Below, piece by piece: positions 1-54,000 of a stretch of 64,000 nucleotides of DNA. The number at the start of each line of letters is the position of its first letter. Within the stretch, counting starts at the first letter, position 1. The DNA is from Thalia democratica (lineage: Eukaryota). The stretch lies in the NCBI GenBank assembly GCA_965202585.1, contig OZ241828.1, positions 56,544,001-56,608,000 on the forward strand. Direction: 5' to 3'. The position numbers and the translations under genes were made by a program. A model generated the notes under the pieces. That model did not search any database and had not been told where the DNA came from. It saw only the letters and a program-made list of their open reading frames with translations.

Positions 1-1627
1 ATATTTTGTATTATAAACTTTTAAAATATGTGTTTTACTTTTAAGTGTTCTTGACTGTAGAAAAAAAAAATCAAGTTAGTTCATATGTTTGCAGACCTAA
101 AAGTTTTACTTTATTTGTAGTGTTTTTTTTTCTAAAAATATTGATGACGTGTTAAAAAATAACTTGTTTTAATTTACTCACATTTTAGATTATTAAAGCA
201 ATATTGTATACTTTGAGGTAATGAGTAAATAATTTTTAAACAGTAAACAATCGTAAAAATATCTAACAACTTTTTCAAAAAATTTAAAACTTCTTATTAA
301 TAAAAAAACTGTTTACTGAATACCATTAACAAACATTCAATTAAAACTTCATTATATTAAAGCTGGTAAACTACTTAATAAATAGTTTAAAACTCAAAGT
401 GAAATGTTATTGGAAAGCTTGTCATTTGTTTTGTTTTAGAAATTTATAGCTATGAAAACAGTTATATGTTAAAGTTTTATTTCAAACTTTTTTCGTTTAA
501 TATTTCTACACAAAGCTACTTTGAAATAATGTTTATTTATGTACTAAAATAAACTATTTTTTTTAGGTCAGTTCTTTTTTCAATGTTTTTCATTCAAAGT
601 GGATTATTTTCAAAAGTTAATGCAGGTAGTTATAGTTTTAATAGAATACAATAAAATTGTACCAATATTTATAATTAAAGCGTTAGAGCTCTTTGAATGC
701 CTTATTTCATCATAACTTTTGCAGCTATTTTCAATAACCAAAAAAAAAACTTTATTTGTTTCTAAAAGAAATTGTATGTTTTAGTTCTATTAAGAGCTTT
801 GAATTAATGTTTTAGAAGTTAACCAAGTTTTTTTTTAAGAATCAGAACATTTTAATATACAACTTACTTATTTCTCATTTTGTGTTCGAAACTAGGAATC
901 AGGTGTTGATACTATAAACAATAGAGTATTTTTGTTTTGTTAATCAAGAAAAAGCGTCAAATGTTTTTGGTACATAAGAGTATATTTAATAAGTTTACTT
1001 TATATACTTAACAAAACAAAACTAAATAAAAAATACCATGCATGTGTTTTACATCATACATAACAGTATTAACAGAGTGTTCCTACTAATATAAATTAAT
1101 TTCCAACTAACTTTTATGTGTCTAATTTATAAAGTAAAACTTTTTTTAAATCACTTTTACTACTAACATTGTAAAATATAAAAAAAATATACACAAGTTG
1201 TAACGATTTCTAATTAAAAGCAAAAAATATGAAGACAATCATAAATTAAAAGGTCGTTTCTAGTATTTATAAGTTATGTTTATATTGACAACAAAACGTT
1301 GCTCAGTCTACTAGACGTATATATGTAATTTAAAATATAGAAAAAGACAACTTTTTAAATGCTATTTGTTGTTGTAAATCTATTAAAAGTTTTTATTATC
1401 TTACAGTAATTAAATAAAAGAGCAAAAAATTTGCACTGTGTACGGTTTTTAAATATTTTTAGAGTTTGTTATTTTAAATAATTTTAAACTTTTATACAAC
1501 AGTGCTTTTTCTAATTTCAAAACCATTTACTAAAAAACCTAAGTACTTATACTATCATACAAGTACAAGTAATATGTTGGTAATACTTACCCGAATGTAA
1601 ATTTGAACTTTTTTTCTACGTTTGCAG

Positions 1628-4600
1628 AAGAAAATTTCAAGTTCATCGAAGTGGAACCAGGAGAAATTCCAGAGGAAGTTTGCCAGCACCAAGAAATGGA
1701 AATGCTTGTAGTTGATGAAAAAATAGAAAATAAAATAATACAAACTATCATTACTTCAGGAAATAAAAAAGACAAATGGTATCGTTTTAAAAGGGTTGAC
1801 GAAGGACTATCGGAGTGTCCAAACTTTCTAAAAGTTGTAAGGTCAGCAACCCAGGAAACAAGATTTTGCTCATCAATGTTAGCTAGATATTTCGCCATCT
1901 GCGAAACAAGCCGAGTAACTGAAAACACGAAAGCTCCTAATACGGACGTTTCTACTGGCAACTCATCATTGAGCACATCAAATATAGTTATCATCGTGGT
2001 CATTGTTCTTATTTTATGTATTGTTACTGTTTTGGGATTAGCATATAAATTATCTCCGCCACACGTCAAGGTAAGTACATAAATTCAGTATAAATTGTTA
2101 TATAAAAATGCTTCGACTTCTAACTTTATTTAACAAAAACACAGTAAATGTGGTTTTTACTTTTTGATTTTTAATTTTCTTTACTTTCTTATTAAACATT
2201 ATTTAATGTCTTGTTTAATTTTAACTTAAAATTATATTGAAAAATGTTTAAATTTATTAATAGTATTCTGTTGTTATCTTTAGTATGTTTTATGAGTAAC
2301 TAGCAATAATTTTTTTGCATTTTGATACTAAAAAATTGAAGAAAAAATAATTTAAATTTTAATACAGAATAACAATTTTTTATTCTTGCAGACTCAATTA
2401 GATAACATCTTCAAGCCGTTAATTCCCGTTAGTTATCTTGGTTTATTTTTATTTTATAATTTATAATTTTTTCAACTTTTTTATAGTAAAATTATCGTGA
2501 CAAAAATTTTATTTAACAACTATAAGTTATTAAAAAAAAAAAAAAAAAGATTAAGAAAAAGAAGATCATAAACTTTGATTATCTGTTTATTGTATTTTAA
2601 AATCTTTATAATACTTATATTTCTAGAGTTGCTTGACAAAGTTCTGCGTAAGAAGAAATCCAGTTAGTTTTGTTTAGTTTTTGTATTTTATTAATAAATA
2701 GTGAGAAAGTATTCAAAATCTGGGTTGTTAAAGCTGTCTTATGTTGTATTTGTTATTTTTATTTCAGAACAATATTAGTTTTTATACGAATGTTTTTTAA
2801 ATGTTAGATATTGAAAATAATAAACTTGAGCTGTTGATGATTAGTTGTGATTAATCAAGTATGTTTTAAACAATTAAATATATAAAATATGTAAATTAAA
2901 AGAGTTAATTAAAATATAACGTCGATCTTATGTATATAAACTATTATTTGTTAAGCAATGTGCAAATAATAATTTGTAAAATTTAATAGATTTTCGTAAT
3001 AAGATTTTGTATTGACAGTTTAGTAGCCAAGTTTTAGTTAAATAAAGTTAAATCAATATTAATTACAAATAATAAATAACAATTAAAAGTATTATGTATT
3101 TAGTAACAACAGTTTTCATAATACTAAGTTTTTTACAGTATCTTTAAAGTCCTTCTTTGTTTTTCCTACTTTAAAAAGCTACTTAAAAAGTAGAAAAGTT
3201 TAAACTAAATTATTTTTTTGATTAATAAATGTTCTTACAAAAACTTAAAAAAGTAATTGTGAAGTATTCTGTTTTTTTACATTTTTATAACAGACTAATC
3301 AAAATTTAGACAATACAACTTCTTAGAAGTAATTTCTCAAAAATCAATAAGTAAAGCGATTGTAACCTAATCAATTTTATTTATTTTTTGCAAATTTTAA
3401 AATATTCTTTAAAAATATGGTTAAAAGAAGTTTACAAAATATAGTTACTTTAAGTAATTATTTAATTACTTTTTCAATTTTACTTTTTTACTATCATGAT
3501 ATTTTTAATTAGATCAAAAATTACTTTTGTTTTCAAACAGCCAGTTAAACACTTATTTTATAGTATTTAGATTGTCATTAAACAGCATGTTTTTATAAGT
3601 TGTTTTAAATACTTATTATAAATTATTATATATTATTAAAGTTTATAATGTTATTAAACTTGAAGAGGTCATAATTTTTTGTCACTGAAACCCGGTTGTG
3701 AATAAAGTATTTATTTTGCACATATTTACTTATATAATATATTATATAAAAAGATACTCTTTCTTTAGCGGTTAAGCTGAAACTTTTGAAAAAAGTTTTA
3801 ATTTAAAACCAGTTGTTAAAAACATGTGTTCTGTCAGCAATTTATGCTAATTATAATTAGGCTTTGTGTAATATTTTGAAATTCGACAAAATATTTTTAT
3901 TTTTATTAGTGGAACTTGAGAAAAAAAAACCATAAAAATCTTTTTTTTTTACCTATTAGTTTTTTTCTTTACTCACTTTATAAAGTGCAACTATGTAAAA
4001 AATCATCTACAGTCTATCTTCATGACGTACTTTGACAGCTACAAAAGTACTTAAAATGTACTTGTTTCACCTATACAAAAACAATGAAATGTAGCACTCA
4101 TATTAGAAACTTGTAGTATTTTAGAATTTTATGCCTTTGTATCTTAGAACGTTCCATTTTTGGAGCTTGCTGAACAAGCAGCTCTGTAAAACTCCACCGC
4201 CCGTTGGTTTCTGTGCGAGAAGCTAAGACTTTAAAATAAAACCTAAGGAAAAATTTATAAATGAAAACATTTTGTACTGGTGTAGGAGGAGCTCTTTTAT
4301 ATTTAGGGTAGAGGGAAATTCTTAGATGTGTGGTTCAATCACGGTGATAAATAAAAACTCTGACACAAAGGTCGTAGTTAGGTTTCGCATTGAATCAAAA
4401 TTTTTCATTGTAATCAGTGTCATTCCGGCAGCTCCTGCGACAATGATTAGCATTGCTGCACAGTTAAGCCGATTTTTGTTGCGGATTGTGATACCCTGCT
4501 GCATAGGCAACTAATAATTTTAGGTTGCAATAATTTTTTTGTTGCTAAAGTTGTTAGTTGATATGTTGCTGCTTCTATAGCTATTATTTTATCTTTTTTT

Positions 4601-7600
4601 TGTTATCGTTGTTGTTAAAGTTATTATAAACAAAGGTATTTATTACTTTAATACAGACGGAAATGTACCATAAAAAATTTATAAGCATACTCGTTTCTCA
4701 TGCAGTACAAAATCGTTTCTACGACTTTATTTCTATTATTTTTAAATTAATTACAACCAGGAGGAAGCTTTAGAAATGCAAGAAATGAACGAAGTCGAAA
4801 TTGAGAACGAAGACAGAAGGTGCCAGAGTGGAAAAAAATTACAAGCTAGTGGGAGGTCTTTAGTGAGTAAGGAAGAAGAAGGTAACAATCAGGACGAAGT
4901 CAGAAACAAGGAAGGAAAGTCGAACGGAGGAAATAGCGAGGAAAGAAACGGTGGGATGGGCGACGCTGGAAGCTCAAGAGGAGAGCAGAAAAAATCATTC
5001 CAATTCAGACTCCAGGGAGTGCTGGGAAAGGTTTGAAAATAAATAAGCATATAGTTCTCTTGTTTTCATATAAATTACTATAAAAATATTTTGTTAATGT
5101 TGTCCTTTTTCATTGTTTTTAAACTTTGTTAGTCAATAGCAAAAGTTAAAACTAATAATGAGCTTAAAAATCAAATATTTTAGTAAACATTTAGATTTAA
5201 TAATTTTTTGATTATTCAAATATTTTTTTTCAAATATAACTATAAACCAAGGGAACCTATGGCACGGTCTTGAAGGCGTGGCACATTGAAGATGAGACCA
5301 GCTATGCCTTGAAACTTCAAATTGTTGATGACCAGTAAGTATGTTTTTTTTTCTATAAAACTAGAAGTTTAACTACTGAAAACTTTTATTATCATAACTT
5401 CCAAATATTTTGTAAGTATTTAATACATGTTATTTTACAACAATTAGCGTAACAAAATATTTATACTAATACATGTTTAATTGCTCATTTTATATGCACA
5501 GAAAAGTTTTTGAGTATCAATAAAAATAGAAACTAAGGGATATAAACACATTCTAATGTACTTTGTTTAAAACTTCTTATTACTTCGTTACTTCTTTATT
5601 AATAGTTTAGCTAAATTTAGGTAACTAAAGATACAGTTGTATCAGAAATATAGTTAAGGTCATCGATTTAAAATCATAAAATTTATGTAGGAAAAATTTC
5701 ATTTAGCTTAATTTAGTTTTTTTTTCTGTTTTAAATATAAATAAAAAGTTAAAAAGTTTTAGAAACTATTTGATCTTTCTCTAGTGTAATTCAGTTGTAC
5801 TATGGTCAAAAAAAAAAAAAAAAATCTAGAATTTGTTTTGGTTCCTAAATAGAACATTAACTTTTTTTTATCATATTTAACTTCATCTATAAAAAAATAT
5901 TGTAAAACTTTGTAAATATTCACTTTTTATGATGTTTTTTCTAATGAAACATGCTAAGCAATTAGTGCTTGAGCGATAAACTATCTTTGTTAAAATAGTA
6001 ACAATTATCACTTACAAATTGAAAAGGTCATCTAATCTCCCCTAAACCTTTTTGTTTCGAAAAAATAAAAAACATATAGATGTAGATATCTTTCAATAAA
6101 TAACTTTTGCAGCTACGGTAAAAGCCTGGTTAGAAATGAGGCGAAAGTTTTGGCCAAAATTCACCACACATCGATTGTGAAATACCACACTTTCTGGCTG
6201 GAAACACTTGATGACGAGTTCAAGTTTGTTATTCTATTTTTAATTAACTTAAAATATCTCATTCGATTTTTGAATACTAAACATTTATTCGTAGTTTTTT
6301 TTTAAATAAGTGTTTTTAAATATTTTTTTTATAATTAAATGATTATAAAAAGCAATGAAAGACTATCATTTTAGTATTTTTGTATAAATTATTTCAATTT
6401 TAATTATTTCACTGTTATTGAAGGGCTTAAATAAAAATTTAAAGAAAGTAGTAGAAGTTTATAATATCCGTCTTTACTTTCTTTACATTTTCAATTTTCA
6501 TTAATTGTTTAAAAAGCAAATTTTTCTAAGTACATATAACATAAGTTTGCAATTAATAAAAAAGTAACTAAGACTTAACTTAGGTTGTTGTTTTCTTGTA
6601 ATCGAAGTTTGTAAAATAGAAAAAGTTCTTTTTTTTTACATGTCATTTTTAAACTGATATGTTGATTAACTATTACAATATAGTCTTATAGTGCATCAGA
6701 AAGTTTTACTAGTTTACTCACTAGCTCATTTTCTAATGTTTTGTTAAAAGTTACTAAAAGTATTTTTTTGCTAAAGTCCCATAGTCAGCTATTATCAAAG
6801 TATTTTTTATATACATTTATTTGATAGATAATAAGACTATTTAAACCATAACCTTCTTTTATTAACGGTGAACATTTTAATTAAACAGTGAATTGTGTGC
6901 ATTTAAACGTGTATATGTTAAAACAATATTTAATTTCTAGAAAATACCTTTCTGAAAACCCAGCAGGAATGACAGGTGACGTCATTAAGCACTTAGAAAA
7001 ACAATTCACTCCGTCTAGTAAGTTGTTCCTATATAAATGTAAACAAAATAGTGCACTAGATGTTTTTTTATTATATCTTTGAAATAAAAATTTCAGTATT
7101 AATTTGCATTGTTATCAAAGGTTTTGCGTATTTTAAGGTTTGTTTAAATGTTTTGTATTGCATTTAAATCTTGTATATTTTTTTAACCCCGTAATTGAAA
7201 GAAATTCAAAAGCGTTAAAGCATGATTATGAAAAAAAAATGTTTTTAACCACTTTTCACAACAAAAAACAAATGTAAAACAAGTTTTTAATTTATTAAAG
7301 TTTATACTTAAACTAATTTGAGCTATTAATTTTTTATTTATGAAAGACAACATAACAAATCATTTCGCAGAGTCGAAGCTCTACATAATTCAAACACAAC
7401 TTTGTTCGTATGATATTTCTAAGTATATCCAAAGCAATGAGGTGTTGGATATAGCAACTGACCTCCGACTAGTCGATGAGGTATAGAGAGTTTGAATGAG
7501 TATAAAATGTTTTAATTCTTATATTAGTGAATTAACTATAGTTTATCGCCGATTTTATTGGTTGTTCATTCAGAGTTTTGTGTTTTAAATTAATAAAAAG

Positions 7601-10058
7601 ACACATGGTACAAAATTTATTTGCATTAATAATTGGTGAGCTTAATTTTCAGGCTTAAAACTTAACAGCGGGTCTTAGAATATATGGAATGCATGTAAAC
7701 CTACTGCTATACTGCAAGATATATAAGATGCATATTGTATTTTTGAACAAAGCAAATTAAACCTTAAAAAAAACAAATAATTAAGCTAACTTTGATAACA
7801 AACTAAAAAATTTGTTGTTTCTTTCAAGTTAAAAGTGAAATACACAATAAAGTATATAAAAAAATTTATACAGTATAACTTTAAATTTGGTTCTAAAAAC
7901 AACGATAAATAAAACATACATTCAGTTGTGTAAGACTTTTATAAGGCAAAAGTTTTAGACAAAACCCAGAAATTATTAAAAACTTTATATATCTCTAGGC
8001 CAGTATTACCAAACAATTCAAGTATCTTCTTCTAAATCTTTAAATAATTTATGATCTCTTAAAAAAACATTTAAGTATATTTCTTTAACTTTATATAACA
8101 GTTTTTTGTGAGTTATGAATTTAGCTGAAGATTAACAAAAAAAGTAAATATTAAAAATAATATCAAATGTTCAACCAATTAAACAATACAAAAGATCTGT
8201 GTTTTTAAAGTTTTACTAAAGCTTTTATTTTTTAGATAAAATTTTTGAAATATATTTTCATTTGAACCAGATAGTTTCAAAAAGTTTAAGGACGTATTAC
8301 TTAATGTTAAACATATAATGAAATATTCTTTCCAGCCATTTTTGAACTAATAGGTACGAAAAAAAAACTTTTAAATATACATTTTAATACTTCATATAAT
8401 ATTTTCCTTTTAAATCAAGCTGCAGATAAAAATAATGGTTTTTTAGTAGTTCAAGACAACATACAAAGATAGAATAAATTTAACTATAATACAGATTTTC
8501 AAGGGACTCGAATATTTGCATGATGACAGAAAACTTGTACACGCCGATATCAAACCTTCAAATGTTCTTTTGAATGACAAGCTTCAGGCTAAGATATGCG
8601 ATTTCGGTTTTGCAAAATACTTTGGTTTGTTTGTAATCAGACAACTAATGTATTTTTTTTTCTTATGACTTAGGTAAGTTTACAAAGTTTTAGGCTAAGT
8701 TTAAACAATTTAAAGAGAAAAATACAAACATGAAAATTATTTTAAATAAATTATAATCAAAATTATTTTAAATGAATTAAATTGTTTTGCTATTGATTTG
8801 CCTAAGTTTAAGATTCAAAGTACTAAATCAAAAAGATAAGTTTTAAGCCTTTAAACAAAGTTCAACTAATCAAGCATAACCGTTTAAGCAACCACACTAG
8901 TACTAAAGTTGCATTTCGCTTGAGATCGCGTTGATATGCCAAAAAACATTTACAATAAACCCTCTAAATAACAATATCAGCCATGGTTGTTGTTTCAATT
9001 AATAGAAGTGAATGAATAAAAATTTCTTCGCTAGCTTTTCCAAAACGTTTCACTAAATTTATTACGGAGACAATATTTTCGAATACTTTATTAGTACTTG
9101 TTTTAGGCCAAGCGTACAAATTTCCTTGGGAACGAAACCTTGTTATTCACACTAGAAATGTCGGTACTGACCTGTTTATGCCACCCGAACAGGTATTGTT
9201 TATATTATGAAAAAATCTTAAATTTTTTAGTAAATAAATTGTATAAATACTACTTCATAGTATATATTAACTCCATAAATTCAACTTTAAGATTAAAATT
9301 ACGTTTGCTTTCATTTTTATCATATAAGAACGTTTTAGCAACATTATCAGTATAAAATTTGTTCAAAAAATCAAAAAAAGTCTTAAAGTAAGCATTAGTT
9401 ATTAACCTCAAAAACTAATTAAAGTTATTATTTAGAAAAAAATCCGTACTATTTATTTTTTTTAGGAATAGAAAACAATTTTGCAAGAATCAATTATCCT
9501 AAAGATTTTACAAATGCTCGCTAAATATTGATATGCAAAATAATAATTTTTTCAGAAAACGAGACAGTTCAGCAGTGCGGTCGACGTCTACTCAGGCGCG
9601 TTGACCGCACTTTTGCTGCTGGCGAGAACGAGGGAGTCTGATACCAAAGCAGTTGTTGAAACTGCGAAATACTATAACAGGCTCCCTCTAGTGTTTGCGG
9701 GAAGAGGTCTCAGATACTTGGTAAGTTTCGTTAACTTTTTTTAATATTTTAACTTATGATAAAACAGATGGTTTATTGGTTTTTTAATAGTCTAGCTTTT
9801 ATTTTCAAGTTTCTATTTTCATGTTCTGCTTTTGATTTTTTTTGTATAAACTTTGGTTTCTTTATAAGCTTTATAGTAATCGTTGGCAAATAGTTAAAGT
9901 TTCATTTTTTACAGCAAAATTTACTGTTGATATGTCTTGATGTAGAGGTCAACAAGCGACCTACGGCAACTCAATTCTCTTCTACTTTAATGTTGTACAG
10001 GCAAATTGCGATTGAAGAATTCAGTACTAGAGGCCAAACTAGTAGTAATTTTATTTAA
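1628..10058 (+). CDS. Single-pass transmembrane Ser/Thr kinase with eIF2-alpha-kinase (PERK/PKR/GCN2)-like catalytic domain; 5' end not found
   Basis: Phase-consistent GT-AG exons: 1628-2070, 2392-2427, 2627-2647, 4761-5030, 5252-5334, 6113-6223, 6941-7017, 7371-7480, 8495-8624, 9107-9192, 9556-9720, 9915-10058 (TAA). TM segment [21 protein letters not shown]. Kinase motifs: [36 protein letters not shown], an insert exon, [44 protein letters not shown]. The two small exons at 2.4-2.6 kb are the least certain. Confidence 0.85.
3651..3705 (+). ncRNA. Degenerate minimal type I hammerhead ribozyme-like motif (UUGAAGA core variant) in a kinase intron
   Basis: ttattaaac-TTGAAGA-ggtc...gtcact-GAAAC-ccg-GTT-gtgaataa. 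Homologous to the minus-strand copy at 16951-17005; stems I and II are imperfect. Confidence 0.4.
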
Positions 10059-15217: not shown

Positions 15218-16030
15218 TTACTGAGTGTTCTTGCCACCAAACGGCGCAGGAACTTCCACGACCGTGTACCTCGAATATTCGGTTGTTACGTCACAACTTT
15301 CAACCGACCAATCGCGTGCTTCCGCGTCGTAAACGCCTTTTTCCCGCTGCCGTCCAAGAAAACAACCACTCTGCTTCCCCGAACCGATACGGCACACCAA
15401 TCGAGGTCAACTGCTGCGGGCGGAATTCTCAGAAAAACGAAGCGATCGCAAACGGAGTCAAAGAACTCGCAGGTCGCAGGCCCGCCGCCGAACACAAACA
15501 ACTTGTTTCCGATCGCCGCCAGCTGACAGTTCGTTCTTTGCTCAATCATGCTCGGCATAAAAGCCCACTCGTCGGCCGCGCTGTCGTACGCTTCAACGCT
15601 CGACAAAATCCTCCATTTTGCGATGCCGACCCGATCCTGATATCCGCCGCACACCACAACCTTGCCTCTGAAAACCGCGCTTCCCGCTAGCGTCCTTGCT
15701 TCGCGCAGCCCTCTGACTTCCTCCAACCCGTGCCTTATCGCGTCAAATCTGACGCAGCGATCCTCTGACCATTCTTCAACATCGTAAAACACCAACGCGC
15801 CTATAACGTAGATGTGGCCCATGAAGGCGCACAAATCGAAGTAGGTTGCAACCAGGTCCAGGTCGGGCAGGTCTTGCCACTCTTGGCCACCTACCGGCAA
15901 CTTTTTTACCTGAACGTTTTGCGTGTTAATTACACTGCCACCGAAAACGTAAACGCAGCCGTCCACGCACGCCGAAGCCCAGAACTGCCGGTATTGAGGA
16001 AACTCCAAATCTGCGCATTTCGTTATTTGG
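15218..16030 (-). pseudogene. Kelch-repeat beta-propeller terminal exon with a 1-nt frameshift; upstream exons not found
   Basis: Kelch blades CVYVFGG, HIYVIG, KVVVCGG...VEAYDSAADEWAFMPSM, KLFVFGG. The natural C-terminus (YDAEARDWSVESCDVT...) continues in another frame (ORF 15218-15400) from about 15340. Candidate acceptor cag at 16031-16033; the frame is closed upstream with no ATG. Confidence 0.7.
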
Positions 16031-16494
16031 CTGCTCAACAAATCAAAAAAATTTACAAAAATAAGTCATGCTGAAATAATAAAATTAAAATTATGTATAA
16101 AAATATGCTATAAAAAATTACTCCATTAAAAATACTAACGCTGTTTTTAGAAACTTTTTTTTTGTAAACATACAAGTAAAGCGTCTTGGTCTAAAATAAA
16201 TGCACTTTGTTTATGATATTTATTTGTAAATAAATACATGCACAAAAACAAAAATATACATGAATAATTTTTAATTTAATTTTTTTGAATAAATTTTAAT
16301 AACTTTTTGTAACAATCTAAAAATTGACGAATTTTGAATTAAGTAATTTTATTTAAACTATGCGTACTTTTAAAAACATTTAATTATAAGTTATAATTAC
16401 AAAAAAAAACATACTTAATTTTTAACTACTAATAGTTTTGAAAATAAGATTTTTGAAGTTTGTCTATAATACATATTAAGATCAAATTTACACC

Positions 16495-28940: not shown

Positions 28941-30530
28941 ATGGCGTCGGACGTATCAAAAATCGCTTTTTGTTTCTTCCTCGTCCTCGTACAAGCAAAC
29001 TGCCAGGTGAGGCTTGCAGAAGTAGTGAACTCCAAGGAAGAGTATCCTTACCACGCCTACATCGAAACCGTTTACCGGGACGCAGATAGGAACTTGTATT
29101 TGAGGGGCGGCGGTTGCGGAGGGGTGATAGTGAGCCGGCACTATGTGCTGACTGCAGCCCACTGTGTGGCAGGGACAATGGAGACAGAAGGACGGCGGAT
29201 GATTCCGCGCCTGAGCGCCATACTTTACTTTGGAATGCTCAAACGCGACATTGTCGACGGTTTCAAACAGCGAATAATCGTAAATCTCGACGAAGACTTT
29301 ATGTTGCACCACCAAGCGCAAACCCATTACAACTCCGACATCGCGTTGATTCACACCGATAAGATCGACATCGACAACGTCGAGATAGCCAGGGCCGTGC
29401 TGGGCAACCCATTGAGCTTGAGTCAGAACGGATGGGAATGCGATGTTAGCGGGTGGGGACGTTCCACTCTGGAAGAAATAATAGCGGGGAAAAACTCGCC
29501 AGTGCTGAAGTCAGCCAGAAACACTATCAGAAACACTAACCAGCCTTTAAACTTGGAAATTCTCGTCAAAGGCGAGTCTTCAATTCACCGGATGTGGCCG
29601 CTGGTGCACGACAACGCAACTAAAAACTACTCGTACGACCTCTCCGGGGAAAAGGCGCAGACGACGATCGCCCCCTCCCCCATGCCCGGAGATTCAGGCG
29701 GCCCGCTGTCGTGCTACCCCCGTTCCAGGTCATTCAATTACGGCCAGCACAAGTCGGTGTACGGGGTTCTTAAGGGGGGCCCGGCGGGGGTCGGCGGCGG
29801 CCACGGCGAGCCGGCAAAGTACACCAGGATCGCCTATCACCACGAATGGATCGCCGACCGCATGAGAGGGCACGAAGGGGAGAGAGCTTTGCTGGACGGC
29901 AGGGACGCTGTCATGGGCCAGTTCCCTTACCAGGCCGCCGTTTTCGACGAGGGCTACGACGTTTTCAAGTGCTCGGGTGCCGTCGTAAGTAAATTTTGGG
30001 TTCTGTCGGGCGCTTCGTGCTTCGAGAAGAACGATGTTGTTTTTGCGGGGGAAGTGGACCACGCAACTTTAAAAAACCCTAAACGCCAGATGCTTATTTG
30101 CGATGAACCATCTCTTACGAGAAACGACCTCCAGCTGTGCAGGGTTGCAAATGGGTTCAAGTTCCACAAGTTTTTAAAAAAAATCGACTTGGAGCCGGAA
30201 GATTTCGTTCCGGTCGAATGCCAGTTTGCCAGCTGGGACTTGAACGCTGATGACAACACTTATTACAAGTACTTGACGTGGAAGAAGGCAAATCTCAACA
30301 GAAACGATCAAAACGGTGGACACTTGGACGTCGAAGAGGTCAATTTGTTTCGTGTCGGTCGAAATGACCGGACGAGCGCGGGAGCGGCGCTGGTGTGCAG
30401 CGGCGCGGGCGGAGGCAGGTACTTGATCGGCATGAGCGAACGAACTGGGGTGGATGCGAGGTTCGTCGACATCAAAGAATACGCTGAGTGGATTAATCAA
30501 CATACTCGACTTACAGCCGAGTTGGAATGA
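28941..30530 (+). CDS. Secreted tandem S1 (chymotrypsin-fold) protease, 529 aa, intronless; N-terminal domain has an intact triad, C-terminal domain is inactive
   Basis: Signal peptide MASDVSKIAFCFFLVLVQANC. Domain 1 has LTAAHC, SDIAL, VSGWG, GDSGGP and YTRI..HHEWI. Domain 2 has GQFPYQA, CSGAVVS..WVLSGASC (His lost), TSAGAALVC (Ser motif lost) and YAEWI. AATAAA-like signal at about 30613. Confidence 0.93.
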   Translation: MASDVSKIAFCFFLVLVQANCQVRLAEVVNSKEEYPYHAYIETVYRDADRNLYLRGGGCGGVIVSRHYVLTAAHCVAGTMETEGRRMIPRLSAILYFGMLKRDIVDGFKQRIIVNLDEDFMLHHQAQTHYNSDIALIHTDKIDIDNVEIARAVLGNPLSLSQNGWECDVSGWGRSTLEEIIAGKNSPVLKSARNTIRNTNQPLNLEILVKGESSIHRMWPLVHDNATKNYSYDLSGEKAQTTIAPSPMPGDSGGPLSCYPRSRSFNYGQHKSVYGVLKGGPAGVGGGHGEPAKYTRIAYHHEWIADRMRGHEGERALLDGRDAVMGQFPYQAAVFDEGYDVFKCSGAVVSKFWVLSGASCFEKNDVVFAGEVDHATLKNPKRQMLICDEPSLTRNDLQLCRVANGFKFHKFLKKIDLEPEDFVPVECQFASWDLNADDNTYYKYLTWKKANLNRNDQNGGHLDVEEVNLFRVGRNDRTSAGAALVCSGAGGGRYLIGMSERTGVDARFVDIKEYAEWINQHTRLTAELE

Positions 30531-42900: not shown

Positions 42901-45900
42901 GAGAAAATGCTCTTAAAAAATTTGTCTAAGAAAACTTTAAAAGCTTATTTATGACTAATAACGATTTTATAGTTAAAGTAGCAAACTAAGCCGATACCTT
43001 TTGATGAGAAAGGCGGTTATCAGTATCAAAAATACCTAGTTAAATATAGATGATTAATATAAATTGAAAGCAAAACTTTTTTTATAAATGCTGACAGGTC
43101 CTATTTAAACAGTCGATTTCAACTAGAATAGTTCTATTGTTCTGTATTCTTAAACACATGCATTAAACCTTTACATGTTTTGTGTTTTTATAATCAGTTA
43201 AAATATTTAACCAGACAATGGCATTGAGGCGCCTGCTTTAATCTTTTAATTTTTTCGAATTTTTCAAACTATCGGTACAAAGTAACTATTGTTTTCACCG
43301 ATTGTTTACATTACCCGTTTCGCTAATATGGACATTAGCTCGTTTGATAAAGTTCAATTTGGTAGCCAAAGTTTCATGAACTATTTAATTAAGATTAACA
43401 TCTTGCTTCTTTTTGCTGTCTTTTCGTTTTTGTTTAACACCGTACTTTTTTAGCTTTTTCTAAAAGTTTAAAGGTTTAAAACGAAATGACGCTTGTGCTT
43501 ACGTGACTAAAAATTTAAGAACATTTTAACGTTTACATTAAAAAAAAAACTTATCTTATAATGAAAAACACTAAAAGTTGTGCTATATATGTTTTAAAAA
43601 GTGCCTGAAACTGTTTAATTATGGCAAAAAAAATTTAGAAGTTTTTATTGTCCATGGTGTAATGTTCATTCTTGATTTTATTATTCTGTTTATTAAGGTT
43701 ATAATTTTTTATTGGGCTTAAGTAAATAAAGACTTTATTTTATATGCTTATCAGCTAAGTCTCATACTACAATCACAAAAAAAAAAATTAATGACGCTTC
43801 ATATTAAAAATTGAATATCTGCACGACCGTGTTAATAAAACTCATCGTAACACCAACTTACTATATCTACCAGCAACAAAATTTTAAACTGCATCTAACC
43901 TTACCCTGTGGTGTTTTACTTTTTAAAAACAACTTTTATTTCTATTGTCTACAGCACAGCTTGTATTAAAAAGCGGTTTTAATACCTATCATCAAGACAA
44001 AGTGCTGAGAAAACGTTTTAACACCTCCCATTTCGAAGAGACAATTGTAAACATTTTATTGTCAAGTCTGTTTACGGCAACTTTTCTTTTGAGTGAGTAA
44101 CGCAAACGGGTTTTAATCCAATTCAAAATTGTAATTATTCTCACTTACTTGCTCGCACTTGCGATAATTATACCAGTCTGACCCGATGAACTGAGATTTA
44201 ACTGTAAATCGGATAAATTTTTTGGTTTTATTTCGAAGAGTTTAAACATTTTACGATCTTTTTATGTACATTTTTAATAAAGGACCACCCAGCTTTCAAA
44301 GTAACTTATATCTGTAACATGAATATTTTCAAATAGCTACATATAAAAACAATGCTATAATTGGAAAACTGCTTTTATATTAAGTTTCATGTGCTTTTGA
44401 GTTATGGTTTGAAAAAAAAATCATTGTAAGCTAATTATTTTAATACGAATACTTAAAAATATAGATGAATGTGCGTGTATATTTTTACTTAAATGATATT
44501 TGTTCTTGCGGTCAAAACCATATAAACGATTAATCAAAACAACAAAGTAGAACTAACAATCATTTTTATATATTACTAACAATACTTCAAACGAACATTA
44601 TCTACGTTTAAAATTTTGATGATAAATTACCGAAAACATCAGTGTAATTTCGTACCAGCTTGCGAAGATCTTAGTCACAAATTCCATAACTAATTTGACC
44701 AACTTTGTTTTTATAGTAGTTTTGAAATGGGTAAAGCTGCTAAGTTTTTTTTTTATACGAGCGGCCGATTTACAAACATTTTTTCTTAGTTTTTCAACTG
44801 AGTATTACGGGGTATTGTGATACTTGAAACTTTGTTTGATATATATCTAAATCATAATTGAATTTTAATGGTGTCTAAACATTTGATAGTATAGACTTAC
44901 AATGGTAATGTTTTATTTTCTTTACAAATTAGAGTATATGTTTAAAATTGCTTAAAGTGTAACAAAAAGTTTTGTTAATGCTTAATTATTTTTTTGTTCA
45001 AAAAATAAATTTTAAAAACTAGCTTTCTCATTAAAAAAAAACTAAAAGTACCTACGGGTTGAAAATTAAAACTTTTAATATTTTAACAAAAAACATCGGC
45101 GAAAGTCAGCAGAGCAGAAGCCTGGACTTTCGTTTGCCGTGAGACAAGCTCAATACAATAGGGTTGATCACGCCAATTCGACCATCAGACCACAAGTTTC
45201 GGTAGACTGAGACCGGTTTCGTCCTTATTAGGACTCATCAGTCAGTCACAACCGAAAAACTTGTAGTCGTCAATCTACAAACGGTTTATGTTGTTTTAAA
45301 CGTTGCACGGCAAATGACAATGCTGACGTCACTGATCATTGCTAGCAAATAGTTGATTCATGTGAAAGCATGATAAACCGTTTGTAGATTGACGACTACA
45401 AGTTTTTCGGTTGTGACTGACTGATGAGTCCTAATAAGGACGAAACCGGTCTCAGTCTACCGAAACTTGTGGTCTGATGGTCGAATTGGCGTGATCAACC
45501 CTGTTGTTTTAATATTTTATATATAAAAAACTAAAATTATCAACAATAGTGTTTCTGAGTTACAAATTTAATTATTTGGATATTTTTCATGCTAATAAAA
45601 AGTATTTAGATATTTAACATGTTAATTATGAAACATTTTAAGGTATAAAATGATTCCTTACGAATTTTTTAGCATAATAAGACAAATGTTTGACATAAAA
45701 AAATACTTATGTAGTTAAAACATTATTTGTAATTTATATATATTTTATCTAAGTTAACGAGACAAAACTTTTTTTTACAAAAGGTTTATTCTGAAATAAT
45801 GATACATAAAAACTAAAAAAATTCTAATTAATTATACTGGATTATCTTGTAACAACTCTTTTTATTGATTACAATAGTTTTAAGTAATTTTATTAATTAA

Positions 45901-48900
45901 GTTAGAATAACAAATTTTCAGTATTTAAATAAAAGCAAACTTTTAATCGCTTTAGAAAATAAAATTTACTTATTTATTTCGTAACACCTACAGAAAAATC
46001 TTTTGAAATTAAAATCACGTTTGGTATTCTTTAGACTTTTAGAGAACATACTTTAAAGTAACGCGTAGTAAATATTTCATAACATTATATACATTCAAAG
46101 GTAACAACTAATTAAAACACAGGTCGCACGTGTGTAAATACGAATCAACCGACTTCTACCACTTTCCAGTGAAGTTGGTTGCCTACCTGAAACCTTCGGT
46201 CAAGTGCTGGCAGAACAAAATAAAAAACAAGTTCGTCTGCTTGAAGAGGTTGGAAAATTTCACAACTTTATAAAATTACAGTTATTAAGTTAAAAACTAT
46301 GCAAAAACTGATAAAACATTGGTAAAAATTTTGTTAAATTTAGAAAGGTATGTTGCACAAGTTTAAATTTTATATAATGCTATATAATTATAGTTAACAA
46401 TCTATAATAAATAGATGTCTTAATAGCACAAAATTACAGTTATTAACTTCTGAGATTTTTAATGATGATGCAATTTTTCACAGCTACGGAAACGGAAGGA
46501 ACATTCCGACCGGCAGGATCGCTTGGAGCTGCTGTGAGAAATTTGTTTTCAGTAAAGCGAGAGGCTACTGCGTCAGGAAACAAAAGAATAAAGGTTTCAA
46601 AACAAGAAGCTTTATTTCTTGTATATTTATATTAATAGGCGATTGAAACTTTGTTACAAAAATTTTAAATAGTTGAGTTACTAAATGGTGATTAATTTTG
46701 TATTGAGTTTTTTGTTTTTAATCATTGACTGTCAGTTGTTTTTACCAAACTTACATTCTATTAATTGTATAGTCATGTTTGATAAAGTTGAGTTCTACTG
46801 TTTTTTCGAAGGTTAATTACATTAATAATATAATAAGATTTACAGAGATTTAAAACTTAAAAATAAAGTAATTATCGAATGTACTTATAGGGAATTTTAA
46901 GTTTTTTTTTTTTGTTTTGAACCCAACAAAACAACTAACTTTATTTTATAAAACACAAGAAATTATTTTTTTTGTTAATTTAAGTAAATTAGATAAATTT
47001 TACATGCTTATTTATACTTTAGATTAAATACCATCTCTATAATCAGCTGAAAATGTCAATAATATTCCTCTGATCAAAAATAAATTGCAAAACTGTCAAT
47101 TTTGTTTTTCACATGTTTCTATGCAGATATACATAACAACTAGTGGCATTATAAATAAAAGGTGTCATAAATGCACGGAGCGTCACTTTTGAATAAACCA
47201 AAACTTTTTAATTAAAAATCCTATTTTAAAATGAATAAGCAAACTGTTTTTTACTTATTGGAAAACAGTGTTTTAAAATAAAAAAGTGACGTTTCGTGCA
47301 TTTGTGACTCGTTCCCTTTCAAATATAGTTATTAGAGAAGTTTAATTTAAAAAACAAATTCTTGTTTAACTTAAAAATAAATAAAAAATAGTAAAGAAGG
47401 CCAGTCTCGCCTTCAACCAGCCGATACAAGTTTCAACTATCGACGAGAGGGGACTGTTCCAAAAGAGCAAGGAAAAAAAGAAGCGCAAGAAGAAGAAGAA
47501 AGGAAAGAAAAGCAGAAGAAAAAACAAGAAGAGGCGAAAGAAGTCGAGCAGGAAGAGGAGCGAACAAGTTGAGAGGAAGAGGAGCGAACAAGTTGAGAGG
47601 AAAATATTCACAAGCTTCAGAGCAGAACACACCAACGGTAATTGTTTTCAAAACATTTTCGTTGAAAATTTTTATCTAACTTTGCTATTTTTTAATTTTT
47701 AAATATCTTTAAACAACTTGCTAGCAGAGTTTCAAGTCAATCAAGCATAGAATTTAAAAAAATAAATAAGACAAACAATCTAAGGCTGATTTTACTGAAT
47801 TTCTTTTATCTAATGCGAATTTTAAATACTTACTTTGCCATACATCTACTAAAGCATCAGTTAACATAATCAGTAGAAAATAAAATGCTACAGATGATTT
47901 TTTGGTTAGTCAAACTAAAATACATTTTTTTGCAAATTTTTTCTAACAGAAAACGCAGAATATTTGAAAAACATAGCTGGAAACTCAATTATAGAAGATA
48001 AACTGGTTGGGTTCGACTCTTTTGAAAATAATAACGTTTACAAAGTGAGTTTTACGATATGATATTTTAAAACCATTAACTAGCAAGATAAGATGAAAGC
48101 TCAAAAATATTTTAGAACAATCTAAAGATTGGATTTTTTACTAATAAATTTCAGCTTTAATATAAATATTAAAGGCCACATATTTACAACATGTTGAATA
48201 AAAGTTTTTAAAAATACTTGTTGCTAATACAAATTAGCTTTTATAACACAAAAAAGGAAATGTCGCTAATTTTACTATATTTTTTAGAGCGTTTTTAGTT
48301 AGCAAAGTACATAAACTAGTCATTATATTTATTATATGCTCGAAAAGTCTTCTACAAAAATAAGTAGACGTGAGCCAATTCAAACTATCTCAAAAAAAAA
48401 AAAACTTAAGGCACAGTCAGGAATGACAATAAGACTGAACAGCTTCCATAACGATGTTTGGACGGCAAACTGCCAGAAAATAACCCAACCCGACTTCTGG
48501 ACGTCTGACACCGCCGTCGTCCACAAAACATCAGGAATCCTGTCCAATGTTCAGGATTCCGTTGCTAGTTACCTGAGCATGAGAAGCAGCTCATTTTATA
48601 TTTTTCTAAAAGGTTCTTATTGAATTTATATTAAAATTTAAGTAGTCGTACCCTTGAGTACTTTGAATAAAGTATTAACTTGCGTACTTAAAAGAAAGTG
48701 TTTACCTAAAAACTACGTTTTTAAGAGATAAGTTACTGCATATTAAAATTAATCAATTATTGTAAAAGAATATTAAGTATTTTTTACACACTTTAAAGCG
48801 CTTTCCAAAGTTGAAGGCTTGATTAGCTTGCTGGAGTCAAATGAACACCCCGTGACCCTTTTTGCGCCGACAAACTCGGCATTCGAAAACTATTCGTTTG

Positions 48901-51900: not shown

Positions 51901-52145
51901 CAGGTTACTACTGTTTCGATGAGCTGATGCAGCGGTCGCACAAAATTAAAACTTTGAACGGTCAGCACGTGACCGCGTGCCCCAAAACCCCCAACTACGT
52001 CATGTTCGGCAGGAGGAGAAACGCGCTGAGGGTGCGCACCGTCACGCCTGACTTGCTGGCGCGTAACGGCATCGTGCACGCCGTAGACAACATCCTCGTG
52101 CCCAAGTACTATGACGTCACAAAGTACCCGAACAAGAAGGGATAG
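39993..52145 (+). CDS. TGFBI/periostin-like secreted fasciclin protein (signal peptide, EMI-like Cys domain, polybasic insert, four FAS1 repeats), 787 aa
   Basis: Phase-consistent exons: 39993-40381, 46123-46248, 46484-46593, 47392-47637, 47950-48044, 48411-48612, 48799-48978, 49492-49638, 50085-50224, 50612-50854, 51086-51190, 51453-51591, 51904-52145 (2364 nt total). Motifs HVC...WSCC...YC, TLFAPTNSAF, DVMATNGVIHSVD, ITLFAVRNRAF, TFLAPTNNQF, DLLARNGIVHAVDNIL. Confidence 0.9.
45192..45264 (-). ncRNA. Type I hammerhead ribozyme (minus-strand copy)
   Basis: Exact reverse complement of 45398-45470. Confidence 0.88.
45398..45470 (+). ncRNA. Type I hammerhead ribozyme (plus-strand copy)
   Basis: Stem I GACUGA/UCAGUC, extended by UCGGU/ACCGA and ACAAGUU/AACUUGU; core CUGAUGA; stem II GUCC-UAAUAA-GGAC; GAAAC; palindromic short stem III ACCGGU; GUC triplet with predicted cleavage after 45451. 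Confidence 0.9.
47161..47316. mobile_element. Small MITE of the same family as 56778, in fasciclin intron 3
   Basis: gtcataaatgcacggagcgtcactttt is mirrored by aaaagtgacgtttcgtgcatttgtgac; the right end gttccc matches the gggaac terminus at 56778. Confidence 0.65.
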
Positions 52146-53596: not shown

Positions 53597-54000
53597 AGTT
53601 GCCGTGCAATAGTAAATACATAGTTTACTTGATAAAACAGCTGGTTTTGAATACGATCAGTGAAAACATCGGCGTAAGTCTATCAGGTCAAAGCCTGGAC
53701 CTGGAGTTACCTGTACCATGAGACAAACTAAAGTTAAAACACGTAAGTCACACGTAAGTCCAGGCTTTGACCTGAGAGACTTACGTCGATGTTATCATTG
53801 ATCGTATTCAAAACCAGCTGTTTTATCAAGTAAACTATGTATTAACTATTGCACGGCAACTAGAAAACCCTGACATTACTGACCATGCCAGCAAACGGTT
53901 GCTACATGGTAAAATGATAAACTGACTGACGAGTATCAATAAGAAGGTTTCAAACTTCCGAAGGTTTGTGGTCTGATGGTCGAAGTTGTATGATCATATC
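53597..54000 (+). mobile_element. Older relative of the 45.1-kb hammerhead element, also with an internal inversion
   Basis: 104-bp inverted arms at 53597-53700 and 53758-53861. Shares aaaacatcggcg..aagcctggac..tgagacaa, ttgcacggcaa..tgataaac and gtggtctgatggtcgaa with 45086-45506. Decayed core tgaCTGACGAgt at 53926-53932, with GAAA lost. Confidence 0.75.

What the first reader, a model, noticed from the sequence alone, without database searches (positions are those of the whole stretch)
1628..10058. Possible lectin-receptor / eIF2-alpha-kinase chimera
The kinase domain has eIF2AK hallmarks (KYHTFWLE, insert between subdomains IV and V, LYI..QLC, HT..VGT.LFMPPEQ). The ectodomain next to the membrane does not look like the PERK luminal domain. 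Its four cysteines and spacing ([27 protein letters not shown]), followed by a Ser/Thr stalk, resemble a degenerate C-type lectin fold. A surface lectin-like receptor wired to a translation-arrest kinase is not a standard animal architecture and could be a lineage-specific pattern-recognition system. The lectin call is pattern recognition only.
Basis: partly seen in the sequence, partly recalled or inferred. Interest (0 to 1): 0.72.

Follow-up and report, generated by a model that had tools for sequence, protein, structure and literature searches.

The report
Lectin-fold receptor with stress-kinase-like domain
This salp (pelagic tunicate) gene appears to encode a membrane receptor with a small lectin-shaped outer domain and an inner protein kinase that partly resembles the translation-arrest (eIF2-alpha) kinases. 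It belongs to a fast-diversifying gene family whose design I did not find described for animals.

Summary
Window 583-10058 (+) holds an intact 11-exon, 568-codon gene. All introns are GT-AG and the phases are compatible.

- **Layout:** short signal peptide, one 4-Cys domain of about 93 aa, Ser/Thr stalk, TM helix, low-complexity juxtamembrane, kinase.
- **Ectodomain:** two independent AlphaFold models (pLDDT 84) match only C-type lectin-like domains (Z up to 8.8; top 50 rows all CTLDs). The domain is compact and lacks the Ca2+/sugar loop. No member hits Pfam Lectin_C. It is therefore lectin-fold, not a shown lectin.
- **Kinase:** it is catalytically complete but non-RD (HAD). Its alphaC-beta4 exon hits eIF2-alpha kinases first (family profile: HRI 2.6e-5, then PERK, PKR). 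It has a beta4-beta5 insert exon and a PERK-like P+1 loop. Its C-lobe matches no solved kinase.
- **Not done:** no whole-domain phylogeny could be run, and eIF2-alpha as substrate is not shown.
- **Family:** there are 17 paralogous ecto exons in the genome, and 12 (this gene among them) have kinase exons 6-11 kb downstream. Kinase dN/dS is 0.06-0.18. Four genes with 96-99% identical kinases carry two near-identical and two very different CTLDs (19-34% identical between types).
- **Expression:** no RNA data exist.

The scan noted this family twice before on other DNA of this genome (s1-311121, s1-301102).

The parts
583..625 (+). Putative signal-peptide exon. ATG at 583 gives a 14-aa hydrophobic leader ending VNA, with a phase-1 donor that fits exon A.
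   Evidence: The donor phase fits the phase-1 start of exon A. Homologous leader exons lie upstream of the ecto exon in at least 7 paralogues, some with longer classic signal peptides. This is inferred; there is no RNA.
1628..1908 (+). Compact C-type lectin-like domain, about 93 aa with 4 conserved Cys (first part of exon A).
   Evidence: AlphaFold gives pLDDT 84.2 and pTM 0.76. The Foldseek PDB top 50 are all CTLDs. VIA wide gives Z 8.8 to mannose-receptor CRD4 with 89 of 97 residues aligned, and all 50 listed rows are CTLDs. AFDB clusters are mostly C-type lectin entries. Cys18, Cys63 and Cys91 are invariant and Cys80 is nearly invariant in 22 sequences.
1909..1983 (+). Ser/Thr/Asn-rich stalk with one NSS sequon.
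   Evidence: Read directly from the sequence. Its length varies among paralogues.
1984..2070 (+). Transmembrane helix (21 hydrophobic residues), a basic/Pro stop-transfer stretch (KLSPPHVK), and a GTAAGT donor.
   Evidence: The SPPHVK end of the exon is conserved in most paralogues.
4761..5030 (+). Exon B: acidic/Gly/Ser/Lys-rich juxtamembrane segment (about 80 aa), then beta1 and the first two residues (G-K) of the Gly-rich loop.
   Evidence: Phase 0 to phase 0 with CAG/GT sites. It is 72% identical at the protein level at the collinear place on Tara contig L027. It has no Pfam hit.
5252..5334 (+). Exon C: the rest of the Gly-rich loop (G-K-G-T-Y-G-T-V across the B/C junction) and the beta3 Lys (YALK).
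   Evidence: It is found in every paralogue examined except C1:29.69M exon set gaps noted elsewhere.
6113..6223 (+). Exon D: alphaC Glu and beta4, carrying the eIF2AK-type signature (..[13 protein letters not shown]).
   Evidence: A single-sequence PDB search gave 23 hits, 20 of them eIF2AKs (PERK 0.0029, HRI 0.0039, GCN2 0.0088). The family profile's top 9 hits are HRI 2.6e-5, then PERK x3 and PKR x5.
6941..7017 (+). Exon E: insert between beta4 and beta5 (25 whole codons plus split codons).
   Evidence: Among the phase-compatible candidate exons it has the best splice sites, TAG acceptor and GTAAGT donor. It is 100% identical at the protein level in the closest paralogue and 48% identical in C1:30.39/30.78M. 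It gives 25-32 extra residues relative to CDK5 and Aurora (14 relative to CHK2) in local alignments.
7371..7480 (+). Exon F: beta5 (LYIIQTQLC), the hinge and alphaD.
   Evidence: It has no PDB hit on its own or as a profile.
8450..8624 (+). Exon G: alphaE, the non-RD catalytic loop (HADIKPSN) and DFG.
   Evidence: Pfam Pkinase 2.1e-15. The best PDB hits among kinases are MEK1, so this exon does not discriminate the family. Paralogues have HAD, HGD, HSD or HCD.
9107..9192 (+). Exon H: extended activation segment and P+1 loop ([15 protein letters not shown]).
   Evidence: The family profile hits the LYK3 RLK at 0.04 and PERK at 0.045-0.063.
9556..9720 (+). Exon I: alphaF-alphaG region (DVYSGAL...), strongly divergent.
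   Evidence: It is conserved among paralogues. No solved kinase is matched by the single sequence or the profile.
9915..10058 (+). Exon J: alphaH-alphaI with the conserved Arg (KRPTA), a C-terminal tail, and a TAA stop at 10056-10058.

Best explanation
The region is an intact gene for a 568-aa type-I single-pass receptor kinase of a salp. From N to C terminus it has a short signal peptide and one compact four-cysteine C-type-lectin-like domain without the long Ca2+/carbohydrate-binding loop. A Ser/Thr-rich stalk, a TM helix and a low-complexity juxtamembrane segment of about 90 aa follow. The C-terminal part is a catalytically complete but non-RD Ser/Thr kinase. Its N-lobe (alphaC-beta4 signature, beta4-beta5 insert) and P+1 loop look derived from the eIF2-alpha kinase (PEK) family. 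Its C-lobe has diverged beyond recognition. Shown here are the gene structure, the CTLD fold, the kinase catalytic residues, the local eIF2AK signature, the multigene family, purifying selection on the kinase, and very divergent ectodomains on near-identical kinases. Inferred mechanism: the CTLD binds an extracellular ligand, more likely a protein or a Ca2+-independent ligand than a classical sugar. Binding brings receptors together. The kinases then activate by dimerisation, as PKR and PERK do, and being non-RD they may not need activation-loop phosphorylation. They phosphorylate a cytoplasmic substrate. eIF2-alpha is a candidate substrate, not the default. The family pattern fits a self/non-self or microbe recognition repertoire. 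Its features are many copies, damaged copies, swapped or diversified ectodomains and non-RD kinases.
For: - **Gene model:** 11 exons, all GT-AG, compatible phases, no stop codon.
- **Architecture:** 12 of the 17 paralogous ecto exons (this gene among them) have a kinase catalytic exon 6-11 kb downstream on the same strand. The full exon series is recovered in the paralogues. Tara contig L027 is collinear through exons A and B.
- **CTLD fold:**. It was replicated with a model built without the window's clade: pLDDT 84.3, best hit CD72 CTLD at Z 8.8 with 92 residues aligned, and all 50 listed rows CTLDs.
- **Kinase:** Pfam Pkinase 2.1e-15. The eIF2AK signature is in exon D. The insert is supported. 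The P+1 loop resembles PERK.
- **Selection:** kinase omega is 0.06-0.18. CTLD omega is 0.28-0.95 in the four pairs with measurable dS, and 3 non-synonymous against 0 synonymous changes in a fifth.
- **Ectodomain diversity:** kinases 96-99% identical are paired with CTLDs 19-34% identical between ecto types; two of the four genes share an 88% identical CTLD.
Against: - Splicing, including the signal-peptide exon, is therefore inferred.
- The 14-aa leader is weak as a signal peptide.
- Fold matches are moderate (Foldseek E about 1e-2, Z below 9), and no family member hits Pfam Lectin_C at E<=1.
- Kinase family assignment rests on short exons. Exon G is best matched by MEK1. Exons F and I match no solved kinase. 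The exon H profile ties PERK with a plant RLK.
- The HRD of all canonical eIF2AKs is HAD here.
- The alphaG region that docks eIF2-alpha in PKR (established knowledge) is not recognisably conserved.
- About 5 of the 11 paralogues examined carry stops, frameshifts or truncations, so some of the family is decaying.
Confidence: 0.62

Rival explanations
1. It is a true eIF2-alpha kinase at the cell surface. Ligand binding to the CTLD dimerises the kinase, which phosphorylates eIF2-alpha Ser51 and triggers translation arrest and the integrated stress response.
For: eIF2AKs rank first for the alphaC-beta4 exon. There is a beta4-beta5 insert. The profile HxxxVGTxLFMPPE aligns to PERK HTGQVGTKLYMSPE. 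The type-I topology is the same as PERK's.
Against: The alphaF-alphaG exon has no detectable likeness to any solved eIF2AK. The catalytic loop is non-RD, unlike PERK, PKR, HRI and GCN2. No whole-domain test was possible.
Confidence: 0.25
2. It is an ER-resident, PERK-like stress sensor. The CTLD would face the ER lumen, sensing for example glycoproteins, and not the cell exterior.
For: PERK, the only membrane-bound animal eIF2AK, has the same type-I topology with a luminal sensor (established knowledge). PERK is among the top hits.
Against: A mucin-like Ser/Thr stalk and a highly diversified multigene ectodomain are typical of surface receptors, not of a housekeeping ER sensor. No ER retention motif was seen. 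The ectodomain is not the PERK/IRE1 luminal fold.
Confidence: 0.08
3. This copy is a non-functional or unexpressed relic of a decaying family, or exon A and the kinase exons are separate transcription units that lie next to each other.
For: There is no RNA evidence. Several paralogues have stops, a frameshift or missing 3' exons. CTLD omega against the closest paralogue is about 0.95.
Against: All 11 exons of this copy are open with canonical splice sites and matching phases. Kinase omega is 0.18 against the closest paralogue. CTLD omega is 0.28 against the Tara contig. The ecto exon and the kinase exons are linked at 12 loci, whereas kinase-exon hits occur about once per 6 Mb.
Confidence: 0.07

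Closest known systems
PERK (EIF2AK3) and the other eIF2-alpha kinases (HRI, PKR, GCN2)
   Same: Like PERK it is a type-I membrane protein with a cytoplasmic kinase. It shares the alphaC-beta4 signature, an insert between beta4 and beta5, the LYI.Q.QLC-type beta5, and the HT..VGT..MPPEQ activation/P+1 segment.
   Different: The sensor domain is a compact CTLD, not the PERK/IRE1 luminal domain. The catalytic loop is HAD, not HRD. The insert is short (about 35 residues between WLE and LYI). The alphaF-alphaG region is not recognisably eIF2AK-like. It is a family of 17 or more loci and not a single-copy housekeeping gene.
[quoted passage not shown] 2000, as cited in PMC2680970)
   Same: It is an animal single-pass receptor with a CTLD ectodomain and a cytoplasmic protein kinase.
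   Different: Sweet Tooth has four CTLDs and a tyrosine kinase. The salp protein has one compact CTLD and a Ser/Thr-type (KPSN) PEK-like kinase.
Plant C-type lectin receptor-like kinases and non-RD RLKs (PMC7758398)
   Same: The layout is lectin-type ectodomain, TM, Ser/Thr kinase. The catalytic loop is non-RD, as in many plant immune RLKs (own knowledge). The P+1 profile hit to LYK3 ties with PERK.
   Different: Plant C-type LecRLKs are single-copy with a calcium-dependent-type lectin domain and an RLK/Pelle kinase. Here the alphaC-beta4 exon points to PEK and the CTLD lacks the Ca2+ loop.
NK-cell and myeloid C-type lectin-like receptors (CD72, LOX-1, NKR-P1, Ly49, CLEC family)
   Same: They are among the best structural matches. 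They also have a CTLD without a requirement for Ca2+/sugar binding, and they form clustered multigene families with diversified ectodomains.
   Different: Those receptors are type-II proteins that signal through ITAM/ITIM motifs or adaptors. This protein is type-I with its own kinase, and the domain is shorter (about 93 aa against 115-130).

Membership tests
[quoted passage not shown] | CTLD fold (beta1-alpha1-beta1'-alpha2-beta2-beta3-beta4-beta5) | tested here: met
   Two independent AlphaFold models (pLDDT 84.2 and 84.3) have this order of elements. All top-50 rows of the Foldseek PDB search and of both VIA wide searches are CTLDs, with Z up to 8.8 and 89-96 residues aligned.
[quoted passage not shown] | Four conserved Cys placed for the alpha1-beta5 and beta3-loop disulfides | tested here: met
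   Cys18, Cys63 and Cys91 are invariant and Cys80 is nearly invariant. They lie in alpha1, at the start of beta3, after beta4 and in beta5 of the model. Disulfide geometry itself was not measured.
Canonical C-type lectin CRD (Ca2+-dependent sugar binding) | Long loop region with EPN/QPD and WND Ca2+/sugar motifs | tested here: not met
   Only about 9 residues join beta2 (residues 50-55) and beta3 (residues 65-70). No such motif occurs in the alignment. The domain is about 93 aa against 115-156 for the matched CRDs.
Canonical C-type lectin CRD (Ca2+-dependent sugar binding) | Match to Pfam Lectin_C (PF00059) | tested here: not met
   None of the 21 family ectodomains hits Lectin_C at E<=1.
eIF2-alpha kinases (PEK: PERK, PKR, HRI, GCN2) | Active protein-kinase core (Gly loop, beta3 Lys, alphaC Glu, catalytic Asp/Asn, DFG) | tested here: met
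   [24 protein letters not shown] and DFG are all present. Pfam Pkinase scores 2.1e-15 on exon G.
eIF2-alpha kinases (PEK: PERK, PKR, HRI, GCN2) | Family-specific alphaC-beta4 sequence | tested here: met
   For exon D alone, 20 of 23 PDB hits are eIF2AKs. For the family profile, the top 9 distinct sequences are HRI (2.6e-5), PERK and PKR.
eIF2-alpha kinases (PEK: PERK, PKR, HRI, GCN2) | Insert between beta4 and beta5 | tested here: met
   Exon E is conserved in paralogues. There are 25-32 extra residues relative to CDK5 and Aurora, and 14 relative to CHK2. The insert is short compared with canonical eIF2AKs, and it depends on an inferred splice.
eIF2-alpha kinases (PEK: PERK, PKR, HRI, GCN2) | HRD catalytic loop (RD kinase) | tested here: not met
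   The window gene has HAD. Paralogues have HAD, HGD, HSD or HCD.
eIF2-alpha kinases (PEK: PERK, PKR, HRI, GCN2) | alphaG region conserved for eIF2-alpha docking | tested here: inconclusive
   Exon I, alone and as a family profile, matches no solved kinase at E<=10. The region has diverged, and this does not prove loss of docking.
eIF2-alpha kinases (PEK: PERK, PKR, HRI, GCN2) | Whole kinase domain groups with PEK in a phylogeny | not testable with these tools
A staggered exon alignment failed in MAFFT.
eIF2-alpha kinases (PEK: PERK, PKR, HRI, GCN2) | Phosphorylates eIF2-alpha Ser51 | not testable with these tools
   This needs a biochemical assay.
PERK specifically | PERK/IRE1-type luminal sensor domain | tested here: not met
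   The ectodomain is a single CTLD. No PERK or IRE1 luminal structure appears among the fold matches.

The most novel reading that the evidence does not exclude
Salps carry a hypervariable repertoire of surface receptors in which a lectin-fold sensor is wired directly to an eIF2-alpha kinase. Recognition of an extracellular ligand (microbe, virus, or non-self tissue in these chain-forming colonial animals) would then shut down translation in the cell directly. That would be a PKR-like defence triggered from outside the cell, evolved in a chordate by putting a CTLD exon on a PERK-type kinase and then shuffling ectodomain exons over a conserved kinase cassette.
Probability: 0.2. Interest if true: 0.85.

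Novelty: new variant of a known kind. Interest (0 to 1): 0.66.

Why it matters
Animal receptor kinases are almost all tyrosine kinases or TGF-beta-type Ser/Thr kinases. The eIF2-alpha kinases are known as intracellular or ER stress sensors. A chordate family that joins a lectin-fold ectodomain to a PEK-like, non-RD kinase would be a new receptor design. Conserved kinases carrying very different ectodomains point the same way. Such a design would be convergent with plant lectin receptor kinases, and it is a candidate innate-immune or allorecognition repertoire in tunicates, the sister group of vertebrates. If the kinase still targets eIF2-alpha, it would link surface recognition directly to translational control. 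If it does not, it shows how a stress kinase was recruited into receptor signalling.

Tried and rejected
- **Whole-domain kinase classification.** The spliced protein has no reference, so it was not sent to any search or fold tool. I tried exon fragments of 10 genes placed on a full-length intronless Wee1/Myt1-like template. In a local MAFFT preview the fragments piled up on one another, so I dropped this approach.
- **PDB searches with exon F, exon I and their family profiles.** No kinase hit was found.
- **Exon G in the PDB.** MEK1 and MAPKs fill the list, so this exon does not discriminate.
- **L055 (C2:14.03 Mb).** This compact RD kinase shares the LRL[VI]DE[FV]KT motif with the family, and its exon-I-like piece is 30% identical over 50 aa to exon I of this gene. 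Its top PDB hit is GCN2 at 4.6e-15. That score comes from two matched stretches in full-length GCN2. Other GCN2 constructs score about 1e-9, like CDK1 and JNK. In BLASTP the window kinase is no closer to L055 than to MEK, CDK5 or Aurora. I rejected it as evidence.
- **RNA evidence.** No RNA run holds the stretch.
- **More distant kinase-family loci.** I did not try another route.
- **Signal-peptide search.** A strict search in the 11.6 kb upstream found nothing convincing. The exon at 583-625 was found only through paralogue conservation.
- **A 118-nt block conserved with two paralogues, across the window start.** It has no conserved ORF or fitting donor phase. It may be a 5' UTR or promoter.
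- **tblastx of the D-F intron against distant paralogues.** This gave nothing. Exon E was found by enumerating splice sites and phases.
- **Literature.** Five searches found no description of a CTLD plus eIF2AK-like receptor in animals.

Full report
**Setting.** The window is G000:C4:56544001-56608000 of an 802-Mb genome with about 25% G+C. Earlier notes of this scan call it a salp, a pelagic tunicate. Related DNA occurs in Tara Oceans marine metagenomes.

**Observation.** Base 1628 is the first base after a TTTGCAG acceptor, and 10058 is the last base of the TAA stop.

**Gene model.** I derived the model from open frames, GT-AG sites, intron phases and paralogue conservation.
- Exons: 583-625, 1628-2070, 4761-5030, 5252-5334, 6113-6223, 6941-7017, 7371-7480, 8450-8624, 9107-9192, 9556-9720, 9915-10058.
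- The phases fit throughout, and the 1,707-nt CDS gives 568 residues without a stop.
- Exon 6941-7017 was needed to reconcile the phase-2 end of exon D with the phase-1 start of exon F. Among the phase-compatible candidates it has the best splice sites. It is 100% identical at the protein level in the closest paralogue, whose neighbouring A-B intron is 88% identical at the DNA level. It is 48% identical in two more distant paralogues.
- The leader exon 583-625 was found because exon A starts in phase 1 at an acceptor conserved in all paralogues. A short hydrophobic ORF with a phase-1 donor recurs upstream of the ecto exon in at least 7 paralogues, in some as a classic 21-24-aa signal peptide. 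In this gene the leader is only 14 aa, so this exon is the weakest part of the model.
- No RNA evidence could be obtained. No RNA run holds the stretch.

**Do the ecto/TM exon and the kinase exons belong to one gene?**
- The ecto exon has 17 copies in the genome.
- For 12 of them, this gene included, a kinase catalytic-loop exon lies 6-11 kb downstream on the same strand. Kinase-exon matches are otherwise about one per 6 Mb.
- In the 11 paralogues fetched, most or all of the exon series A to J is recovered in order.
- A 4.4-kb Tara contig is collinear with window 970-5139 at 76-81% DNA identity. Exon A is 70% and exon B 72% identical at the protein level.
- This is strong comparative evidence for the fused architecture, though it is not RNA proof.

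**Ectodomain.**
- Sequence searches find only ORF-sized homologues from marine metagenomes.
- Pfam finds nothing, not even Lectin_C at E<=1, in any of 21 members.
- An AlphaFold model from a 21-sequence alignment (pLDDT 84.2, pTM 0.76) has the order beta-alpha-beta-alpha-beta-beta-beta-beta.
- Foldseek against the PDB lists 50 C-type lectin-like domains in its top 50 (LOX-1, mannose-receptor CRD4, SPL-1, and others). E is about 1e-2 and TM by query reaches 0.68.
- An aligner that does not depend on Foldseek gives Z 8.8 to mannose-receptor CRD4, with 89 of 97 residues aligned. All 50 listed rows are again CTLDs.
- AlphaFold DB clusters agree.
- As a control I folded a distant subfamily without the window's clade (14 sequences, pLDDT 84.3). 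It has the same topology, its best match is the CD72 CTLD (Z 8.8, 92 residues aligned), and all 50 rows are CTLDs.
- The four conserved Cys sit where the two canonical CTLD disulfides sit.
- The domain is compact at about 93 aa. Only about 9 residues stand where canonical lectins have the long loop with the Ca2+ and sugar motifs.
- It is therefore a lectin-like fold, and Ca2+-dependent sugar binding is unlikely. The PERK/IRE1 luminal fold is excluded.

**Kinase.**
- The catalytic residues are complete: Gly loop, YALK, alphaC Glu, catalytic Asp and Asn, DFG.
- The loop is HAD, and the paralogues have HAD, HGD, HSD or HCD. The whole family is non-RD, unlike PERK, PKR, HRI and GCN2.
- Because the domain is split over nine exons and the spliced protein has no reference, I could test only exon by exon.
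  - Exon D (alphaC-beta4) gave 23 PDB hits, 20 of them eIF2AKs. A profile of seven family members improved this: HRI 2.6e-5, then three PERK and five PKR sequences before any other kinase.
  - The exon H profile ties a plant LysM RLK (0.04) with PERK (0.045).
  - Exon G prefers MEK1.
  - Exons F and I match no solved kinase, alone or as profiles.
- Local alignments to intronless CDK5 and Aurora genes of the same genome show 25-32 extra residues between beta4 and beta5. The CHK2 alignment shows 14. Smaller inserts lie before alphaE and in the activation segment.
- I read this as probable descent from the PEK family, at about 0.6. The C-lobe is remodelled, so eIF2-alpha cannot be assumed as the substrate.
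- The LYI.Q.QLC motif is not unique to eIF2AKs. Wee1/Myt1-like genes of this genome have LFIQMELC and are also non-RD. Human Wee1 and Myt1 did not appear among the exon D hits.

**Family dynamics.**
- Between paralogue pairs the kinase exons have dN/dS of 0.06-0.18.
- The CTLD has 0.95 (closest paralogue), 0.34-0.40, 3 non-synonymous against 0 synonymous changes in one pair, and 0.28 against the Tara contig. Counts are small. Both parts are constrained, the ectodomain less so.
- Four genes (C105:~101 kb, C1:82.5 Mb, C1:83.76 Mb, C105:~10 kb) have 96-99% identical kinase exons. Two of them share an 88% identical CTLD. Between the three ecto types the CTLDs are only 21-34% identical.
- This needs either exchange of the ecto exon between genes or gene conversion confined to the kinase half.
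- About 5 of the 11 paralogues examined carry a stop, a frameshift or a truncated 3' end. The family therefore evolves by birth and death. The window copy is intact.
- The exon D profile detects about 23 strong kinase-family loci (E below 1e-8), more than have a detectable CTLD exon.

**Mechanism.**
- Shown: the domain order, the type-I topology implied by leader, TM helix and basic stop-transfer stretch, a complete catalytic core, and constraint on both domains.
- Inferred:
  - A ligand binds the CTLD.
  - Receptors cluster.
  - The kinase activates by dimerisation in the PKR/PERK manner (established for those kinases).
  - A cytoplasmic substrate is phosphorylated.
- A surface location is suggested by the Ser/Thr stalk and the ectodomain diversity. 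It is not shown, and an ER location like PERK's remains possible.
- An immune or allorecognition role is suggested by the family pattern and by the association of non-RD kinases with pattern-recognition signalling (own knowledge). It is speculation.

**Comparison with what is known.**
- The closest kinases are the eIF2AKs. The closest topology is PERK's.
- The closest receptor designs are Hydra Sweet Tooth, a tyrosine kinase with four CTLDs (PMC2680970), and the plant C-type lectin receptor-like kinases (PMC7758398).
- The closest ectodomain structures are NK-cell and myeloid CTLD receptors.
- Five literature searches found no CTLD plus PEK-like receptor in animals.
- The same family was noted twice before by this scan on other DNA of this genome. 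One of those copies was described as having a dead kinase. The copy here has a complete catalytic core.

**Verdict.** The lectin-fold call and the chimeric architecture are supported. The eIF2AK call is partly supported. Function is open. I rate it a new variant of a known kind (receptor kinases), with interest 0.66.

Noticed in passing
window 28941-30530 (+): An intronless 529-aa ORF lies in a locally G+C-rich stretch (43% against 25%). It has a signal peptide and two trypsin-like serine-protease domains. The first has the TAAHC and GDSGGP motifs. The second appears to lack the catalytic motifs.
   Followed up: no
window 15286-16041 (-): A 251-aa open frame in a stretch of 35% G+C has Kelch-repeat-like sequence. 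It is probably one exon of a Kelch-domain gene on the minus strand.
   Followed up: no
L056 (G000:C4:56836000-56840000); similar hits at C4:56866440, C4:56925270 and C133:49214; L057 (C9:29.73 Mb): Several intronless ORFs of 646-647 aa and one of 469 aa encode divergent Wee1/Myt1-like non-RD kinases (HLDVKPDN, LFIQMELC). They have long Ser-rich N-terminal regions. Three of them lie 0.3 Mb from this window.
   Followed up: partly
L055 (G000:C2:14029500-14032700): A compact RD kinase gene with short introns shares the LRL[VI]DE[FV]KT motif with the receptor family. Its exon-I-like piece is 30% identical over 50 aa to exon I of this gene. It could be a cytoplasmic cousin or ancestor of the family. 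Its apparent GCN2 top hit is an artefact of two matched stretches.
   Followed up: partly
L008 last 80 bases plus window 1-36: A 118-nt block is 75-78% identical to a block about 1.3 kb upstream of the ecto exon in paralogues C1:30.39 Mb and C1:30.78 Mb. It has no conserved ORF. It may be a 5' UTR exon or promoter of the family.
   Followed up: partly
G000 loci (for example C4:33321785, C4:32724323, C5:64476735, C8:64332809, C4:74306154, C1:92403145): About ten further loci match the family's exon D profile at E 1e-9 to 1e-12 but have no detected CTLD exon. The kinase cassette may be joined to other ectodomains or to none.
   Followed up: no
L007 (G000:C1:29683000-29692999), exon I region near 4687-4749: The closest paralogue (kinase 98% identical) loses similarity after about 14 residues of exon I, and no exon J was found. 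It may be a recently truncated copy.
   Followed up: partly
window 45086-54000: Hammerhead retrozyme insertions already described by earlier notes of this scan (s1-306603, s1-306604). They are unrelated to this gene.
   Followed up: no
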